Part shown: one piece after another, positions 39,204-43,995 of the stretch
How the letters are laid out: the number at the start of each line of letters is the position of its first letter
Numbering within the stretch: position 1 is the first letter of the stretch
Virus record (IMG/VR): IMGVR_UViG_3300017917_002374
Coordinates: 186,001 to 250,000 of that record
Reading direction: 5' to 3' (one strand)
Length of the DNA stretch: 64,000 bases
Notes under the pieces: model-generated
Seen by the model: the letters and a program-made list of their open reading frames with translations, nothing else
Databases searched by the model: none
Told to the model about the DNA's origin: nothing
Made by a program: the position numbers and the translations under genes

Positions 39204-40217
39204 ATGAGCAACCTATTTAAAAAAGCCGCAGTATTCACAGACATTCATTTTGGACTGAAGTCAAACAGTGTCACTCATAACGAGGACTGTTTGGCTTTTG
39301 TAAAATGGGCCACTGCCAAGGCAAAAGAAGAAGGGTGTGACGCCTGTTTCTTTCTAGGTGACTGGCACAACAACCGAGCTGCACTGAACATTCTAACATT
39401 GAATTACAGTCTGCGAGCTCTGGAGTACATGAATGACAACTTTGATGCTGTATATTTTATACCTGGGAATCACGATCTTTATTATCGCGATAAGCGTGAT
39501 GTTCAGTCAGTTGAATGGGCACGTCACCTCCCTAATGTCAAGATTTGCAACGATTGGTTTCAAGACGGGGATGTCGTTATCGCTCCTTGGCTTGTTGGGG
39601 ATGATCATAAGCGGCTAGCCAAGAAACGTGCCAAGTATTGTTTTGGACATTTTGAACTGCCCGGTTACTACATGAACGCCATGGTACTCATGCCAGACAC
39701 CGGCGAAGCCAAACGCGAAGACCTAACTGGGTTTGAACATGTGTTTACTGGGCACTTTCACAAACGTCAAACAGCAGGCAACGTGACCTATATAGGCAAC
39801 TGTTTCCCACACAATTATGCAGATGCAGGAGATGATTCTCGTGGCATGATGATCCTGGAGTGGGGCAAGGAACCCGAGTATCATGCTTGGCCAGATCAGC
39901 CCACATATCGTGTGCTGGGTCTCAGTGAAATTGTAGACAACGCAGACAATGTGTTTAGACCCAAGATGCATGCTCGTGTGAACATTGACATTGACCTTAG
40001 CTACGAAGAAGCCAACTTTATCAAAGAAACCTTTGTGGACACTTACAAGCTGCGCGAGCTCAGTCTCATACCTCGCAAGGAAGTCAGTGTGAATGAAACT
40101 GCAACTGGTGAAATCATATTTGAAAGCATTGACACAATCGTGCAAAATCAAATCAATGCTATTGAAAGCGATCATTTTGATCCTGTACTACTGCTAGATA
40201 TATACAGAAACTGCTGA
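39204..40217 (+). CDS. gp47: Recombination endonuclease subunit gp47 (SbcD/Mre11-like)
   Basis: Metallophosphoesterase motifs DIHFG, GDWH, GNHD, GHFE and GHFH. Confidence 0.93.
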   Translation: MSNLFKKAAVFTDIHFGLKSNSVTHNEDCLAFVKWATAKAKEEGCDACFFLGDWHNNRAALNILTLNYSLRALEYMNDNFDAVYFIPGNHDLYYRDKRDVQSVEWARHLPNVKICNDWFQDGDVVIAPWLVGDDHKRLAKKRAKYCFGHFELPGYYMNAMVLMPDTGEAKREDLTGFEHVFTGHFHKRQTAGNVTYIGNCFPHNYADAGDDSRGMMILEWGKEPEYHAWPDQPTYRVLGLSEIVDNADNVFRPKMHARVNIDIDLSYEEANFIKETFVDTYKLRELSLIPRKEVSVNETATGEIIFESIDTIVQNQINAIESDHFDPVLLLDIYRNC

Positions 40218-41989
40218 TGTTCACAATTAAAACACTCACCGTAAAGAACTTTATGAGTGTGGGTAACGCCACACAGGCAATTAAATTTGACCGCCAAGAC
40301 CTCACCCTGGTACTAGGACAAAACCTAGACCTGGGCGGGGATGATACTGGTGCACGTAACGGTACAGGCAAGACCACTATTATTAATGCCTTGAGTTATG
40401 CACTCTATGGCGAAGCACTTACCCGCATACGTAAAGAAAATCTAATCAACAAGACCAACGGCAAGAACATGTTGGTTACCATTGAGTTTGAAAAGGATGG
40501 TCAAGGTTATCGTATTGAACGTGGTCGCAAGCCTAATGTGACCAAGTTCTTTGTAGGCGACGTAGAGCAAGAACAAAAAGAAGATGAAAGCCAGGGTGAT
40601 TCAAGAGAAACACAAGCAGAGATTGAACGCATGCTGGGCATGAGCCACGACATGTTCAAGCATATTGTGGCTCTTAATACTTACACCGAGCCTTTCCTCA
40701 GTTTGAAAGCAGCTGACCAGCGCATCATGATTGAACAACTGCTGGGCATTACTCAACTGAGTGAAAAGGCAGAAACACTAAAAGAACAAATCAAAGCCAC
40801 AAAAGATGCAATCACTCAAGAAGAGTTTCGCATCAAAGCCGAGCAAGATGCCAATCAACGCATGCTGGATCAGATAGAAAATCTCAAACGCAGGCAAGGC
40901 TTGTGGCAGAAAAAGCATGACGAAGATATTGCTGGATTTCAAGCAGCCTACGACGAGTTGGCCAAACTGGATATTGAAGCTGAACTTGAAGCTCACCAGA
41001 GGTTAACCGCACATGCTCAACTGCTCAAAGATCGTGCTGATGTAGAACGAGCACTAGCGCGAGCTAGAACAGATCATACAAGATACAAAAAGTCTGCAGA
41101 CAAACTAAAACAAGAACTAGACGCTTTACTAGAGCACCGATGTCATGCTTGCGGGCAGGAGTTGCACGACGACAAGCATGAAGAAATACTTGCAGACAAA
41201 CGCAACGAGCTAGATGCTGCTGCCACAGAGTACGATGCAGTTGGCGCAGACATTATAAAATATGAGCATGCACTAGAACAGCTGGGCACGCCTGGGCCTG
41301 CTCCTGTAACCTTTTACAAGCAGGAAAGTGATGCATTTGAGCATCGTGCTAGCATGGCACATGTGCTGAGCCAGCTTACTTCCAAGCAGGACGAGCAAGA
41401 TCCTTATGCTGATCAAATAACAGAAATGCAGGCACAAGCACTGGCCGAAGTGGATTATACTGTGATGAACGAGCTGGTACGCTTGCGTGATCACCAGGAT
41501 TTTCTGTTGAAATTGCTTACTAGCAAGGACAGTTTTGTGCGCAAACGCATCATAGATCAGAATTTAACCTATCTCAACACACGACTATCAGAGTATTTAG
41601 ACAGGATCGGTCTGCCGCATACAGTGACGTTTTTGAACGATTTAAACGTGAATATCACAGAACTAGGACGCGAATTAGACTTTGATAATCTGTCTAGAGG
41701 CGAGCGAAATCGCTTGATTTTGAGCTTGAGTTGGGCATTTAGAGACGTTTGGGAAAGCCTGTATCAGCCCATAAATCTACTGTTTGTGGACGAAGTTATA
41801 GACACAGGCATGGACAGCTCTGGTGTAGAAGCCAGCTTGGCCATCCTAAAGAAAATGAGCAGAGAGCGTAGCAAAAGTGTTTGGCTAGTAAGTCATAAAG
41901 ATGAGCTGGTCAGCAGAGTTAACAACGTGCTCACAGTAACCAAGAGCAATGGCTTTACAGAATATGGCACAGACATAGATTCCAAATAA
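40217..41989 (+). CDS. gp46: Recombination ATPase gp46 (SbcC/Rad50-like)
   Basis: Walker A NGTGKT, coiled coil with CHAC zinc hook, signature LSRGE, Walker B LFVDE. Confidence 0.94.
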   Translation: MFTIKTLTVKNFMSVGNATQAIKFDRQDLTLVLGQNLDLGGDDTGARNGTGKTTIINALSYALYGEALTRIRKENLINKTNGKNMLVTIEFEKDGQGYRIERGRKPNVTKFFVGDVEQEQKEDESQGDSRETQAEIERMLGMSHDMFKHIVALNTYTEPFLSLKAADQRIMIEQLLGITQLSEKAETLKEQIKATKDAITQEEFRIKAEQDANQRMLDQIENLKRRQGLWQKKHDEDIAGFQAAYDELAKLDIEAELEAHQRLTAHAQLLKDRADVERALARARTDHTRYKKSADKLKQELDALLEHRCHACGQELHDDKHEEILADKRNELDAAATEYDAVGADIIKYEHALEQLGTPGPAPVTFYKQESDAFEHRASMAHVLSQLTSKQDEQDPYADQITEMQAQALAEVDYTVMNELVRLRDHQDFLLKLLTSKDSFVRKRIIDQNLTYLNTRLSEYLDRIGLPHTVTFLNDLNVNITELGRELDFDNLSRGERNRLILSLSWAFRDVWESLYQPINLLFVDEVIDTGMDSSGVEASLAILKKMSRERSKSVWLVSHKDELVSRVNNVLTVTKSNGFTEYGTDIDSK

Positions 41990-42032
41990 TAAAATTTAAT
42001 CATGGCACCGCTGGAGATAATTATGTTTGCAA

Positions 42033-42467
42033 ATGACGTGGACCTATCAAGGAAATATTGTAGAAGAACTACCAGACAACTGTGTGGGGTTTGTCTATGA
42101 AATTGTTAACCTTGCCACTGGACGCAAGTACATTGGTAAAAAACTGGCAAAATTTGCACGAACTTCTTATCGAACAGTCAAATTAAAAAATGGCACAAAA
42201 AAACGCAAACGTGTTAAAAGCAAAATACCTTCAGACTGGCTCACCTATTACGGCTCCAATGATATTCTAAACGAAGATGTACAACAACTAGGCGCTGATA
42301 AATTCACCAGAGAAATACTCTATTATTGTTATTCCAAGGCAGAATGTAGTTATATTGAAGCAAGAGAACAGTTTACAAGACGGGTTCTTGAATCAGATGA
42401 CTACTATAACGGACACATACAAGTCCGTGTACATGGCTCACACATCAAAGGCAAATTAAGTAGTTAG
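42033..42467 (+). CDS. GIY-YIG family nuclease
   Basis: GFVYEIVNLATGRKYIGKK…YYGS…FTREIL…E; ATG 42033 preferred over the track's TTG 42027. Confidence 0.8.
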   Translation: MTWTYQGNIVEELPDNCVGFVYEIVNLATGRKYIGKKLAKFARTSYRTVKLKNGTKKRKRVKSKIPSDWLTYYGSNDILNEDVQQLGADKFTREILYYCYSKAECSYIEAREQFTRRVLESDDYYNGHIQVRVHGSHIKGKLSS

Positions 42468-42840
42468 GCTCGCACAGGCCAATCACGTGTGCCCTACACC
42501 TGGATCTAGGATCGCAGGGATGGAAGTCTTGCCGCTACAGCAAGCACTCAATCACTACCCTTCGGGATGAAGATGGCAAATTGCCGCCATTTGATTGTTT
42601 GAACAGGATTCATAAAGGCTAAAAAGACGCTCTAGCGATAGAGCACGTTTGTTAGGTGTGCTGATATACATTTAACAAACCGCCGTTGTAATAAAGACTG
42701 CGCTCGAGGTACCGGACAACCGCCTCTGTAATGCGTTAATATCAGTGACTGTGCTACTCAGATGATGTACAGCTTTGCCCGCCCTGGGCAAAGAGTGACC
42801 AATTAATCTAGATGATATACGTTCGCGCTTCGCGCATGAA
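42465..42840 (+). ncRNA. Candidate large structured non-coding RNA (family not recognised)
   Basis: ORF-free gap filled with stems: GCTCTA-GCGA-TAGAGC, CC-TTCG-GG, a 14-bp stem 42647-42680 whose loop CTGATA complements TATCAG 42740-42745, CTTTGCCC/GGGCAAAG, and others. Confidence 0.65.
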
Positions 42841-42893
42841 AAAAAAATAATATCACTGAGCGCAAGCGAAAGTGATAGATCTCGCTAGAGATC
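42839..42893 (-). terminator. Probable intrinsic terminator of the gp26-gp51 operon
   Basis: Hairpins GATCTC/GAGATC (42878-42893) and TATCACT/AGTGATA (42851-42877), followed on the minus strand by a long U-run. Confidence 0.55.
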
Positions 42894-43112
42894 TTAAAAG
42901 AATGGCAATCCTGAATCCTTGGTTGCTTTCATATTATCTTTGATAATTTCGCCTATGAGTTCTTTTTCGTGTTGTCCAAGCATCATGGCGTCTTCGTAGC
43001 TGAGTCCTCCACGCATCCACCATACCATTCTTAGTGCTTCGTCTCTTATGGCTCTTGCCTCTTTATCCATGCTTTCCAGCAATTTCTCAATACCGTTTAG
43101 GTCAAGATTCAA
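42894..43112 (-). CDS. Small baseplate hub assembly protein, gp51-like
   Basis: 72 aa with WWMRGGLSYEDAM; ATGA overlap with gp26. Confidence 0.6.
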   Translation of the reverse strand: MNLDLNGIEKLLESMDKEARAIRDEALRMVWWMRGGLSYEDAMMLGQHEKELIGEIIKDNMKATKDSGLPFF

Positions 43113-43978
43113 GAGCCGGGTGCGAAAAAATTGGCGTAATCAAAAGTCACAGCAATAGACAGTGTTCCTTGGCAACCGGCACAATTGGTTTCTTGTGGCG
43201 GAACTGCACCTTCTGCTGCAACTTTTCCGTAAGTTTCTTGTATTTTGGTAGCCAATCGGCCGTCAATGTTTTTGTAAAATTCAAGAATGTAATTTTGATC
43301 AAACACCTTTTGTTCAGGGTTGTCCATCAAAGCAATATACTCTGTGGCTTCTGTTAGCACCTCAAGGTTAAGATCAATTAATCTTTTCATTTGAGAAACA
43401 GCTTCCTGTGTTCTAGACTCGTCATCTTCAATGTCATCAATTGCTTGCGACAGTTTGGAAATTTCAAAGCTGATCTTGTTGTTTTTGTTCACACCAAAAT
43501 AAGCCTGCGGTCTGAATTTTACTATCAAAGATTCTATGTTGTGTTCTTGATCAAAATTTGGTGGTCTCACTTTTTCCAACACACTGCGCAAATCCATGGT
43601 ATATGTATGCACTTCGTCGCAGTGCGGACACTTGCTTTCAAAATCCATGTTATGACCATAGCTGGCAATACGTATGGCAATCAGCACAGTATCCACATCA
43701 GTAGCAGGCATTTGCCACGCATTTTTAATATTTGGACAGCAACTCTGCATCACATCTACCATGCCTTGCCCGTTTATCATGGCATCCGGTGTGCGCAAGA
43801 GTATTTCATCTCGGCTGGTCATTGGATAAACTGGAATTTCGCCAGTTTCTGGTAGCTGTAAAGCGCCTTGTGGCCAATACGTTCCTCCGCTGGGCAAGGC
43901 CACGTAAATGGCAGGTTGTCTGAACATTTTGGCCAGCGGGTTGGTTTGAGCTTGTTGTTGCTGTGGAAAAGACTGCAT
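43109..43978 (-). CDS. gp26: Baseplate hub assembly protein gp26-like
   Basis: NPLAKMFRQPAIYVALPSGG, PVYPMTSRDEI, AIRIASYG, CPHC and CAGC zinc motifs; ATG 43978 has a GGGGA SD (track start 43990). Confidence 0.8.
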   Translation of the reverse strand: MQSFPQQQQAQTNPLAKMFRQPAIYVALPSGGTYWPQGALQLPETGEIPVYPMTSRDEILLRTPDAMINGQGMVDVMQSCCPNIKNAWQMPATDVDTVLIAIRIASYGHNMDFESKCPHCDEVHTYTMDLRSVLEKVRPPNFDQEHNIESLIVKFRPQAYFGVNKNNKISFEISKLSQAIDDIEDDESRTQEAVSQMKRLIDLNLEVLTEATEYIALMDNPEQKVFDQNYILEFYKNIDGRLATKIQETYGKVAAEGAVPPQETNCAGCQGTLSIAVTFDYANFFAPGS

Positions 43979-43988
43979 TTTGATCCCC

Positions 43989-43995
43989 ATAAATA
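43989..43995 (+). promoter_or_regulatory. Late promoter ATAAATA (tape measure)
   Basis: 30 nt upstream of ATG 44026. Confidence 0.55.

What the first reader, a model, noticed from the sequence alone, without database searches (positions are those of the whole stretch)
42033..42840. GIY-YIG nuclease physically fused to the structured RNA: possible nuclease-ncRNA system
The first RNA stem uses the gene's own stop codon (TAGG 42465-42468 pairs with CCTA 42493-42496), and no separate promoter is visible, so ORF and RNA are probably one transcript. The minimal 144-aa nuclease has a very basic insertion (RTSYRTVKLKNGTKKRKRVKSK) and no separate DNA-recognition domain. Established analogies are IscB-omegaRNA/HEARO and TnpB-reRNA, where a compact nuclease is paired with an adjacent RNA. 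Inference: this may be a GIY-YIG ribonucleoprotein (guided nuclease, mobile element or recombination helper next to gp46/47). Similar small GIY-YIG proteins are common in T4-like phages, so the linkage must be tested.
Basis: partly seen in the sequence, partly recalled or inferred. Interest (0 to 1): 0.72.

Follow-up and report, generated by a model that had tools for sequence, protein, structure and literature searches.

The report
Phage nuclease gene beside large RNA
A small GIY-YIG nuclease gene in a giant T4-like freshwater phage is followed by a roughly 430-base, pseudoknotted RNA of unknown function. Its first third is the known Polynucleobacter-1 RNA. The pairing is real in this phage lineage, but gene and RNA each occur without the other elsewhere, so an RNA-guided nuclease is unlikely.

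Summary
Both objects are real. ORF 42033-42467 (+) is a 144-aa SegE-type GIY-YIG domain with catalytic residues conserved and an I-TevI-like fold. The basic insertion is a long beta-hairpin. The RNA at 42467-42600 is Rfam RF01718 (119 bits).

- **RNA extent.** The conserved RNA runs to about 42894, roughly 430 nt. It has at least 13 covarying helices, three of them pseudoknots, and two repeat units that change in concert.
- **Linkage in this clade.** In freshwater T4-like phages the order is gp47-gp46-[variable]-seg-RNA-[variable]-baseplate. The seg-RNA junction is closed in 91% of loci, while both flanking junctions usually carry insertions.
- **Independence elsewhere.** 766 isolated phage records have the gene but no RNA was detected. 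Polynucleobacter and other bacterial chromosomes carry the RNA without the gene, next to DUF6641 and a 188-aa tyrosine recombinase.
- **Guide model.** There is no guide-like variable segment and no protein-RNA coevolution signal.
- **Prior record.** The adjacency was already noted in the supplement of Weinberg et al. 2010.

Best reading: an autonomous orphan RNA, probably transcribed at the 3' end of the recombination-nuclease operon. An RNP is not excluded.

The parts
39204..40217 (+). gp47-like Mre11/SbcD nuclease subunit (context: start of the + strand gene run)
   Evidence: Pfam Metallophos. Syntenic in related contigs.
40217..41989 (+). gp46-like Rad50/SbcC ATPase (context)
   Evidence: Pfam AAA_23 and SMC_N. 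49-80% identical in related contigs, always upstream of seg.
42033..42467 (+). seg-like gene: 144-aa stand-alone SegE-type GIY-YIG nuclease domain with a basic beta-hairpin insertion (residues 40-66)
   Evidence: PF19835 E 3.6e-31 and phrog_447 E 8e-36. AF2 pLDDT 93.9. VIA Z 8.9 to the I-TevI catalytic domain. Invariant Y22, Y33, G35, R93, E109, N126. Single copy in the 355-kb genome.
42467..42600 (+). RNA 5' domain = Rfam RF01718 Polynucleobacter-1. Helices: PK1 42467-69:42478-80; P1 42472-76:42488-92; P2 42500-06:42510-17; P3 42526,42528-31:42541-45; P4 42549-53:42593-97; P4a 42555,42559-60:42565-66,42569; P5 42572-77:42586-91.
   Evidence: cmscan 119.4 bits. Each helix is 89-100% paired with compensatory changes, and 0 of 200 shuffles reach the observed value.
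42601..42894 (+). RNA 3' domain, not in Rfam. Helices: H6 42628-31:42642-45; H7 42648-59:42668-79; H8 42700-03:42733-36; H9 42706-09:42723-26; H11 42773-81:42785-93; H11b 42825-28:42832-35; H12 with GNRA tip 42860-61:42866-67; H13 42877-83:42888-94.
   Evidence: Conservation profile. RNAalifold gives 59 pairs, 44 with compensatory changes. Own covariation counts with shuffles and slid controls. In helices, G-U 331 against A-C 25, so the + strand is the folded strand.
42661..42744 (+). Pseudoknot PK2: loop of H7 (42661-66) pairs with 42739-44
   Evidence: 6 pairs, 98% paired, all 6 with double changes, 0 of 200 shuffles as good.
42687..42718 (+). Pseudoknot PK3: UGU 42687-89 pairs with ACA 42716-18 in the loop of the invariant GGUACCGGACAACCGCC hairpin
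   Evidence: 3 pairs, 99% paired, all with double changes (UA/CG, GC/AU, UA/GC).
42745..42766 (+). Repeat unit 1: GUGAC-N-ACUCAGAUGAU
   Evidence: Four variable positions are always identical to those of unit 2, in 86 of 86 RNAs. At least 14, 6, 5 and 6 changes on the tree, always in both units.
42795..42816 (+). Repeat unit 2: GUGAC-N5-AUCUAGAUGAU
   Evidence: As for unit 1. The full unit pattern occurs only at these two places in the 354,959-bp genome.
42894..43112 (-). Convergent 72-aa ORF (context: first gene of the minus-strand baseplate block). Its stop codon abuts hairpin H13.
   Evidence: ORF list. Homologues lie upstream of the baseplate gene in related contigs, at 0 to about 3.4 kb from the RNA.
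43109..43990 (-). T4 baseplate protein gene (context)
   Evidence: PF12322 E 2.2e-15.

Best explanation
The window holds two separate things that one phage lineage keeps side by side.

1. **The gene.** It is a conserved, single-copy, stand-alone GIY-YIG nuclease of the phrog_447 / PSSM2_218 family. This family is widespread in T4-like phages and is often mislabelled 'NAD synthetase'. It probably acts on DNA as a low-specificity nuclease or nickase. It is not a mobile homing endonuclease.
2. **The RNA.** It is an autonomous, roughly 430-nt, highly structured non-coding RNA. Its 5' third is the Polynucleobacter-1 motif. Its core is the 3' domain: the invariant GGUACCGGACAACCGCC hairpin, two pseudoknots, two concertedly evolving repeat units and two terminal hairpins.

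The same RNA sits in accessory regions of Polynucleobacter and other freshwater bacterial chromosomes. There it is transcribed divergently from a DUF6641 gene, so it presumably has its own promoter, and it works without this nuclease.

In the phages it sits at the 3' end of the gp47-gp46-...-seg gene run. It is most likely made by read-through from that operon and then persists as a stable structured RNA. This would explain why insertions are rare between the last ORF and the RNA.

**Shown:** identity of both parts, the fold of the RNA, the strand, the clade-restricted linkage and the independent occurrence elsewhere.

**Inferred:** co-transcription, stability, the DNA substrate of the nuclease, and that the RNA acts through a partner that reads both repeat units. 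The biochemical role of the RNA remains unknown.
For: **Identity**
- RF01718 at 119 bits.
- PF19835, phrog_447, the AF2 model and Z 8.9 to I-TevI.

**RNA extent and fold**
-.

**Gene behaves as a core gene, not a mobile one**
- Single copy in the genome.
- Fixed synteny across the clade.
- Identity to the window protein is 56-86%, as conserved as gp46 at 49-80%.

**Gene without RNA**
- 766 phage records hold the protein.
- blastn of 41900-43200 finds nothing in 50,697 phage records.
- Melnitz (54% identical protein), S-SRM01 and phiN3 whole genomes have no RF01718.
- nhmmer finds neither RNA domain in those loci or next to PSSM2_218.

**RNA without gene**
- 25 bacterial loci were found. None of the 24 on bacterial contigs has a seg homologue; the 25th (L209) is a phage-like contig in a MAG, cut at the end where seg would lie.
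- Five RNA-bearing genomes have no PF19835.
- RF01718 is found in 10 of 81 Polynucleobacter genomes, at 1-2 copies, so it is accessory.
- It is flanked by a divergent DUF6641 gene and a 188-aa tyrosine recombinase.

**RNA at the operon end rather than tied to seg**
- Extra + strand ORFs are packed between seg and the RNA in about 9% of loci.
- A lineage has the RNA on the other strand.
- A second type of 5' domain follows seg in other loci.

**Earlier record**
- Weinberg et al. 2010, supplement: most Polynucleobacter-1 RNAs lie downstream of GOS11034 genes with possible homology to PSSM2_218.
- PSSM2_218 is 36% identical to this protein, E 2e-17.
Against: - The seg-RNA junction is far more closed (18 of 196 above 150 nt) than its neighbours (146 of 167 and 67 of 109). 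This could mean functional coupling beyond shared transcription.
- The linkage survives a swap of the RNA's 5' domain.
- No transcript data could be obtained. The two wastewater runs labelled RNA-Seq were probably DNA, and the one true metatranscriptome touched only 42119-42312. So co-transcription, RNA ends and stability are unverified.
- No U-tract follows H13, so the 3' end is undefined.
- The partner that reads the two repeat units is unknown and could be the nuclease.
- Sampling is biased towards IMG/VR freshwater contigs, and the bacterial loci were found with a pattern that fixes the unit sequence.
Confidence: 0.55

Rival explanations
1. Ribonucleoprotein. The seg nuclease binds the adjacent RNA, for instance two protomers on the two repeat units through the basic beta-arm. 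The RNA would scaffold, target, activate or restrain the nuclease. This is a clade-specific partnership, not a programmable guide.
For: - The gene-RNA junction is tightly closed compared with the flanking junctions.
- The linkage is kept across two different 5' domains.
- The protein has no DNA-recognition domain, and has a long, highly basic beta-hairpin with 14 K/R in 41 residues.
- The two RNA units change in concert, as expected for sites read by one oligomeric partner.
- In bacteria the RNA sits near another minimal DNA enzyme, a 188-aa tyrosine recombinase with the catalytic domain only.
Against: - Gene without RNA in all isolated phages examined, and RNA without gene in bacteria.
- Other ORFs are inserted between the two in about 9% of loci, and one lineage has an inverted arrangement.
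- No protein column follows the unit changes (low power).
- The length of the beta-arm does not track RNA presence: the L051 group has the RNA and the short arm.
- No variable guide-like segment.
Confidence: 0.17
2. Cis-acting 3' UTR element. The structure protects the operon mRNA from 3' exonucleases, terminates or insulates convergent transcription against the baseplate block, or couples seg translation to RNA folding.
For: - The RNA always lies after the last + strand ORF and faces a convergent gene block.
- PK1 starts at the stop codon in this window.
- No separate promoter was found.
Against: - About 430 nt with three pseudoknots and invariant single-stranded stretches is far more than a stabiliser or terminator needs.
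- No U-tract follows H13.
- The bacterial copies are transcribed divergently from DUF6641 and follow no ORF.
- In the L181 lineage the RNA is on the other strand.
Confidence: 0.1
3. Toxin-antitoxin-like pair. The RNA neutralises the nuclease (type III-like), or the nuclease processes the RNA repeats.
For: A nuclease lies next to a structured RNA that contains two repeated units.
Against: - The protein is not of a ToxN/AbiQ/CptN type.
- There are only two units, they lie downstream of the gene, and they are embedded in a large fold.
- The gene is harmless without the RNA in hundreds of phages.
- The RNA exists without the gene in bacteria.
Confidence: 0.04
4. DNA-level element. The two concerted direct repeats, 50 bp apart, are protein-binding sites (iteron- or operator-like), or the region is a recombination or replication site. 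The RNA-like structure would then be secondary.
For: - Identical rather than complementary co-variation of two direct repeats is typical of sets of DNA-binding sites.
- The neighbours are DNA enzymes: gp46/47 and GIY-YIG in phages, a tyrosine recombinase in bacteria.
Against: - At least 13 helices have compensatory changes.
- The strand asymmetry is strong, G-U 331 against A-C 25, which requires a folded + strand.
- The unit is not enriched elsewhere in the genome.
- No conserved flanking inverted repeats were found in bacterial loci.
Confidence: 0.05

Closest known systems
Polynucleobacter-1 RNA motif (Rfam RF01718; Weinberg et al. 2010, PMC2864571)
   Same: Window 42467-42600 matches the whole 141-position model at 119 bits. 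It has the same helices, the same freshwater and Burkholderiales range, and the same upstream gene family noted in the paper's supplement.
   Different: - The conserved RNA is about three times longer than the model. It has a 3' domain, two further pseudoknots and two repeat units.
- The paper found no copy in purified phage. Here it lies in a complete 355-kb T4-like phage genome and hundreds of viral contigs.
- The RF01718 part can be replaced by another 5' domain.
SegE / I-TevI type GIY-YIG endonucleases (Pfam PF19835; PDB 1LN0, 1MK0)
   Same: GIY-YIG fold and motif residues. The Pfam match covers the whole protein.
   Different: - No C-terminal DNA-binding domain.
- Single copy, fixed synteny, and as conserved as gp46. 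It does not behave like a sporadic homing endonuclease gene.
- A 25-residue basic beta-hairpin is inserted between the YIG motif and the catalytic Arg.
phrog_447 / T4-GC 213 (PSSM2_218 of cyanophage P-SSM2), annotated 'NAD synthetase'
   Same: Same family: phrog_447 at E 8e-36, and 36% identity to PSSM2_218. Same length of about 145 aa.
   Different: Those homologues, in cyanophages and in Sinorhizobium, Stenotrophomonas and Escherichia phages, have no room for the RNA downstream and no match to it.
IscB-omegaRNA / TnpB-reRNA (HEARO) RNA-guided nucleases
   Same: A compact nuclease gene directly beside a large structured RNA on the same strand.
   Different: - Different nuclease fold (GIY-YIG, not RuvC/HNH).
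- No guide-like variable segment.
- No transposon context. The position is syntenic in a phage core region.
- Gene and RNA occur independently.
Large orphan structured RNAs linked to phages and mobile elements (GOLLD, ROOL, OLE); named from general knowledge, not tested here
   Same: Several hundred nucleotides, many covarying helices and pseudoknots, phage or accessory-island location, unknown biochemical function.
   Different: No sequence or structure match to any of them in Rfam 15. Oligomeric state is unknown.
T4 endonuclease II (DenA), a small GIY-YIG enzyme without a separate DNA-binding domain; named from general knowledge
   Same: Size class and domain economy, in a T4-like phage.
   Different: No sequence match to any solved GIY-YIG structure by phmmer or profile, apart from a weak hit to 3R3P. 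Structural neighbours are I-TevI and PD-T4-3, not EndoII.

Membership tests
Rfam RF01718 Polynucleobacter-1 RNA | Covariance-model score at or above the curated gathering score over the full model | tested here: met
   119.4 bits against 37, model positions 1-141.
Rfam RF01718 Polynucleobacter-1 RNA | Consensus helices kept by compensatory changes in relatives | tested here: met
   P1-P5 are 89-100% paired with double changes, and 0 of 200 shuffles are as good.
GIY-YIG nuclease superfamily (SegE_GIY-YIG, PF19835) | Profile match above the curated cut-off | tested here: met
   108.4 bits against 25, E 3.6e-31.
GIY-YIG nuclease superfamily (SegE_GIY-YIG, PF19835) | GIY and YIG tyrosines, catalytic Arg, metal-binding Glu and conserved Asn | tested here: met
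   Y22, Y33-I34-G35, R93, E109 and N126 are invariant in 32-35 homologues. The assignment to I-TevI Y6/Y17/R27/E75/N90 is by position in the fold and is an inference.
GIY-YIG nuclease superfamily (SegE_GIY-YIG, PF19835) | GIY-YIG alpha/beta fold | tested here: met
   VIA Z 8.9, 84 of 94 residues, rmsd 2.6 A to 1LN0. The next unrelated hit has Z 3.8.
Free-standing Seg-type homing endonuclease (mobile gene) | Separate C-terminal DNA-binding domain giving site specificity | tested here: not met
   144 aa, and the Pfam domain covers residues 3-129 of the 144-aa protein. The model shows one domain plus a beta-arm.
Free-standing Seg-type homing endonuclease (mobile gene) | Sporadic presence and variable position among related phages | tested here: not met
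   Present at the same place in essentially all related contigs and single copy in the genome.
RNA-guided nuclease with adjacent scaffold RNA (IscB-omegaRNA, TnpB-reRNA) | Variable guide segment of about 15 nt or more next to a conserved scaffold | tested here: not met
   The longest unpaired variable run is 7 nt. The flanks are a coding region and a convergent gene.
RNA-guided nuclease with adjacent scaffold RNA (IscB-omegaRNA, TnpB-reRNA) | Obligate co-occurrence of nuclease and RNA | tested here: not met
   Gene without RNA. RNA without gene.
RNA-guided nuclease with adjacent scaffold RNA (IscB-omegaRNA, TnpB-reRNA) | Physical binding of protein to RNA and RNA-dependent target cleavage | not testable with these tools
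This needs EMSA, RIP and cleavage assays.
Type III toxin-antitoxin (ToxIN-like) | Tandem array of RNA repeats upstream of an endoribonuclease toxin gene of the ToxN/AbiQ/CptN type | tested here: not met
   Two units only, downstream of the gene and inside a large fold. The protein is GIY-YIG.
tRNA / tmRNA | Detected by ARAGORN | tested here: not met
   No tRNA or tmRNA in the window.

The most novel reading that the evidence does not exclude
The RNA is a cofactor that supplies substrate recognition or assembly to minimal DNA enzymes that lack their usual DNA-binding domains. In phages this would be the domain-only GIY-YIG nuclease. In bacteria it would be the 188-aa, catalytic-domain-only tyrosine recombinase. 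The two concertedly evolving repeat units would be the docking or recognition sites. That would be a new class of RNA-dependent DNA nuclease and recombinase system.
Probability: 0.07. Interest if true: 0.9.

Novelty: new variant of a known kind. Interest (0 to 1): 0.5.

Why it matters
The RNA family and its position downstream of this gene family were recorded in 2010, but with no host, no full structure and no identified neighbour.

This window places it in a complete T4-like jumbo phage. It shows that the neighbour is a GIY-YIG nuclease. It also shows that the Rfam model covers only a third of a large, multi-pseudoknot RNA, whose two repeat units have changed together dozens of times.

Large orphan RNAs of phages and mobile elements are a small class that has attracted much study. 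This one is abundant in lakes and shared between phages and their probable hosts. Polynucleobacter strains that carry it can be cultured, so its function is testable.

For the specific claim of a guided nuclease, the result is mostly negative. That saves effort.

Tried and rejected
- **Transcript evidence.** The look-up of sequencing runs gave three runs labelled RNA. Read laying showed two were probably DNA, and the third covered only 42119-42312. There is no information on RNA ends.
- **Complex prediction.** Complex prediction with two protein copies plus RNA 42596-42895 was not folded by the tool.
- **Distant protein relatives.** The search for related loci with a protein alignment returned only close relatives again. 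Distant homologues were taken from the phage collection instead.
- **First structure job.** It was repeated without them.
- **tmRNA or tRNA-like identity.** None found.
- **Other Rfam families.** Nothing at relaxed threshold in 41900-43200.
- **Terminator reading of H13.** No U-tract follows it.
- **K-turn or C/D-box reading of the units.** Rejected, because the G of GAUGAU is A in half of the sequences.
- **Repeat unit as a dispersed genomic motif.** The full unit occurs only twice in the genome, and the short core is only about two-fold above shuffles (18 sites against 7.4 ± 1.4), consistent with coding AGATGAT sites.
- **Inverton idea for bacterial loci.** Inverted repeats around the RNA next to the small recombinase are present in L218 but not conserved in other loci.
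- **DUF6641 function.** No lead from Pfam or the ESM Atlas, and no literature. No DUF6641 in the phage genome.
- **Protein-RNA coevolution.** No column follows the unit changes, with only 5-10 independent changes available.
- **Length of the basic arm as a marker of RNA association.** It does not track RNA presence.
- **First all-against-all covariation screen.** Too permissive to be useful. It was replaced by a double-change screen.
Full report
**Setting.** The window is bases 186001-250000 of a 354,959-bp IMG/VR virus record with direct terminal repeats. Around the finding lie gp47-like (39204-40217) and gp46-like (40217-41989) recombination nuclease genes on the + strand. A 72-aa ORF and a T4 baseplate gene lie on the minus strand. 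This is a T4-like jumbo phage. DNA runs that hold the stretch are almost all freshwater metagenomes.

**The gene.**
- ORF 42033-42467 encodes 144 aa. It matches Pfam PF19835 (SegE_GIY-YIG) at E 3.6e-31 over nearly its whole length, and phrog_447 at E 8e-36.
- In 32-35 homologues Y22, Y33, G35, R93, E109 and N126 are invariant.
- An AlphaFold2 model (pLDDT 93.9) shows a GIY-YIG core.
- The only structural neighbours standing above noise are the I-TevI catalytic domain (Z 8.9, rmsd 2.6 A over 84 residues) and the GIY-YIG domain of PD-T4-3 (Z 7.4).
- It is the only PF19835 gene in the genome.
- tblastn finds relatives in 766 isolated phage records, from cyanophages and from Methylophilales, Sinorhizobium, Stenotrophomonas, Escherichia and Salmonella phages. 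Many are annotated 'NAD synthetase'.
- PSSM2_218 of cyanophage P-SSM2 is one of them: 36% identity, E 2e-17.

**The RNA.**
- cmscan places Rfam RF01718 (Polynucleobacter-1) at 42467-42600 with 119.4 bits against a gathering score of 37. It is the only Rfam family in the window and the only copy in the genome.
- Conservation among relatives does not stop there. It continues to about 42894.
- I collected 85 non-redundant full-length relatives, each under 92% identical to any other, with median pairwise identity 67%.
- RNAalifold predicts 59 pairs, 44 of them with compensatory changes.
- A double-change screen and my own counts with shuffled and slid controls support the helices listed under 'parts'.
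- Three are pseudoknots: PK1 42467-69 with 42478-80; PK2, the loop of H7 with 42739-44; PK3, UGU 42687-89 with the ACA of the invariant GGUACCGGACAACCGCC hairpin loop.
- In these helices G-U pairs outnumber A-C 331 to 25, so the + strand is the folded strand.
- The single-sequence fold of 42467-42894 has z = -3.66.

**The stop-codon stem.** TAGG 42465-68 and CCTA 42493-96 are complementary in this window. Across 86 RNAs the four pairs are standard in only 52% of cells. 186 of 200 shuffles do as well, and nothing covaries. G42467-G42468 belong instead to PK1. So the RNA does begin at the last base of the stop codon here, but the stop codon is not a conserved part of the fold.

**Linkage, RNA to gene.**
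- In all but five, a homologue of the gene (56-86% identical) lies on the same strand upstream. In most it lies immediately upstream; in seven it is 0.7-1.9 kb away.
- Three exceptions are cut by the contig end. Two have no gene within about 500 nt.
- Synteny is gp47-gp46-[variable]-seg-RNA-[variable]-orf72-baseplate.

**Linkage, gene to RNA.**
- The counts below pool all distinct seg-bearing loci, from both the RNA-selected and the protein-selected sets.
- Among 194 such loci with at least 700 nt downstream, 177 have the 3' domain and 161 have the RF01718-type 5' domain.
- Some of the rest carry a different, mutually conserved 5' part that joins the same 3' core. I call this type II. These loci have no RF01718 hit.
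- Gaps above 150 nt occur in 146 of 167 gp46-seg junctions, 18 of 196 seg-RNA junctions (median 13 nt) and 67 of 109 RNA-orf72 junctions.
- Where the seg-RNA junction is open, it holds one or two further + strand ORFs packed tightly against the RNA.
- In L181 and L249 the gene abuts orf72, and the RNA's 3' domain lies upstream on the other strand.

**Independence outside the clade.**
- blastn of 41900-43200 finds nothing in 50,697 phage records.
- The closest isolated relative (Melnitz, 54% identical protein), S-SRM01 and phiN3 have no RF01718 anywhere in their genomes and little room after the gene.
- nhmmer finds neither RNA domain in these loci or near PSSM2_218.
- Conversely, a pattern from the bacterial form of the repeat units found 25 loci in Polynucleobacter, other Burkholderiales, alphaproteobacteria and others, several on megabase contigs.
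- None of the 24 loci on bacterial contigs has a seg homologue. The 25th (L209) is a phage-like contig in a MAG, cut at the end where seg would lie.
- Five RNA-bearing genomes have no PF19835 match.
- RF01718 occurs in 10 of 81 Polynucleobacter genomes, at one or two copies, so it is accessory.
- There it is flanked by a divergently oriented DUF6641 gene, and usually by a 188-aa tyrosine recombinase made of the catalytic domain only.

**Guide-RNA test.** No unpaired, well-occupied, variable run in the RNA is longer than 7 nt. The flanks are a coding region and a convergent gene. There is no transposon context.

**Repeat units.**
- Two units (42745-66 and 42795-816; GUGAC-N-AYYYRGAURAU) flank hairpin H11.
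- Their four variable positions are identical in both units in 86 of 86 RNAs.
- On a tree built without those columns, the positions changed at least 14, 6, 5 and 6 times, always in both units. Nine of nine independent pairs go the same way.
- The change is identical, not complementary, so something reads both units.
- No complementary partner column was found in the RNA. The full unit occurs only twice in the genome.
- No seg protein column follows the changes (low power).
- The bacterial RNAs carry a different but again shared sequence in both units.

**Prior knowledge.** The supplement of Weinberg et al. 2010 states that most Polynucleobacter-1 RNAs are downstream of GOS11034 genes with possible homology to PSSM2_218. 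It also states that none was found in purified phage. Their raw alignment already shows conservation 3' of the motif. The adjacency is therefore not new. What is new:
- the identification of the neighbour as a GIY-YIG nuclease;
- the phage context;
- the full extent and pseudoknots of the RNA;
- the second 5' domain type;
- the concerted units;
- the bacterial DUF6641/recombinase context.

**Verdict.** The guided-nuclease analogy is not supported. The most likely picture is an autonomous orphan RNA transcribed at the end of the gp47-gp46-seg operon, beside a core GIY-YIG nuclease. A clade-specific RNP remains possible at about one chance in six. Binding, transcript ends and function need experiments.

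Noticed in passing
L136, L140, L142, L146, L162, L164 (downstream of seg); L174, L197 (after an extra small ORF): A second, mutually conserved 5' domain ('type II') replaces the RF01718 part. It joins the same 3' core: the GGUACCGG.CAACCG hairpin, the repeat units and the terminal hairpins. Rfam has no model for it.
   Followed up: partly
L181:1958-2207 (minus) and L249:958-1207 (minus): In this lineage seg directly abuts the convergent orf72, and the RNA's 3' domain lies upstream of seg on the opposite strand. The RNA cannot be part of the seg transcript there.
   Followed up: partly
L206-L230 (for example L218:3949-6281); L231 and L232 (G001:C1:396000-426000): Bacterial module: DUF6641 gene (divergent), the RNA, a variable spacer, then a 188-aa catalytic-domain-only tyrosine recombinase. 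One Polynucleobacter genome has two modules 18 kb apart, around DUF2703, DUF6803, DUF411 and HAD genes.
   Followed up: partly
L028, L034, L037, L063, L104, L107, L115, L148, L179, L185, L132, L137, L154: One or two extra + strand ORFs are wedged between seg and the RNA. They include two recurring ORF groups of 259-278 aa (three of them beginning G/ACS(Y/F)TAG) and 329-341 aa, ORFs of 458+151 aa, and in L115 a second GIY-YIG-like ORF. No family search was run on them.
   Followed up: no
window 42745-42766 and 42795-42816: The two repeat units co-vary identically at four positions in 86 of 86 RNAs, over at least 31 inferred changes. What reads them is unknown.
   Followed up: yes
L313:26712-27149 (PSSM2_218) and many rows: Members of this GIY-YIG family (phrog_447, T4-GC 213) are annotated 'NAD synthetase' in GenBank, RefSeq and PHROGs. 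The profile and fold say nuclease.
   Followed up: partly
window 42838-42875: An A-rich run (42838-42850) precedes hairpin H12. Read on the minus strand, this is a hairpin followed by a T-run just after the orf72 stop, so part of the RNA's 3' end may double as a terminator for the convergent baseplate block. The terminator scan did not report it.
   Followed up: no
window 42013-42035: The GGAG at 42013-16 is better spaced for an out-of-frame ATG at 42023 (a 25-codon ORF) than for the seg start at 42033. The seg start was chosen from homologues, which begin MTW.
   Followed up: no
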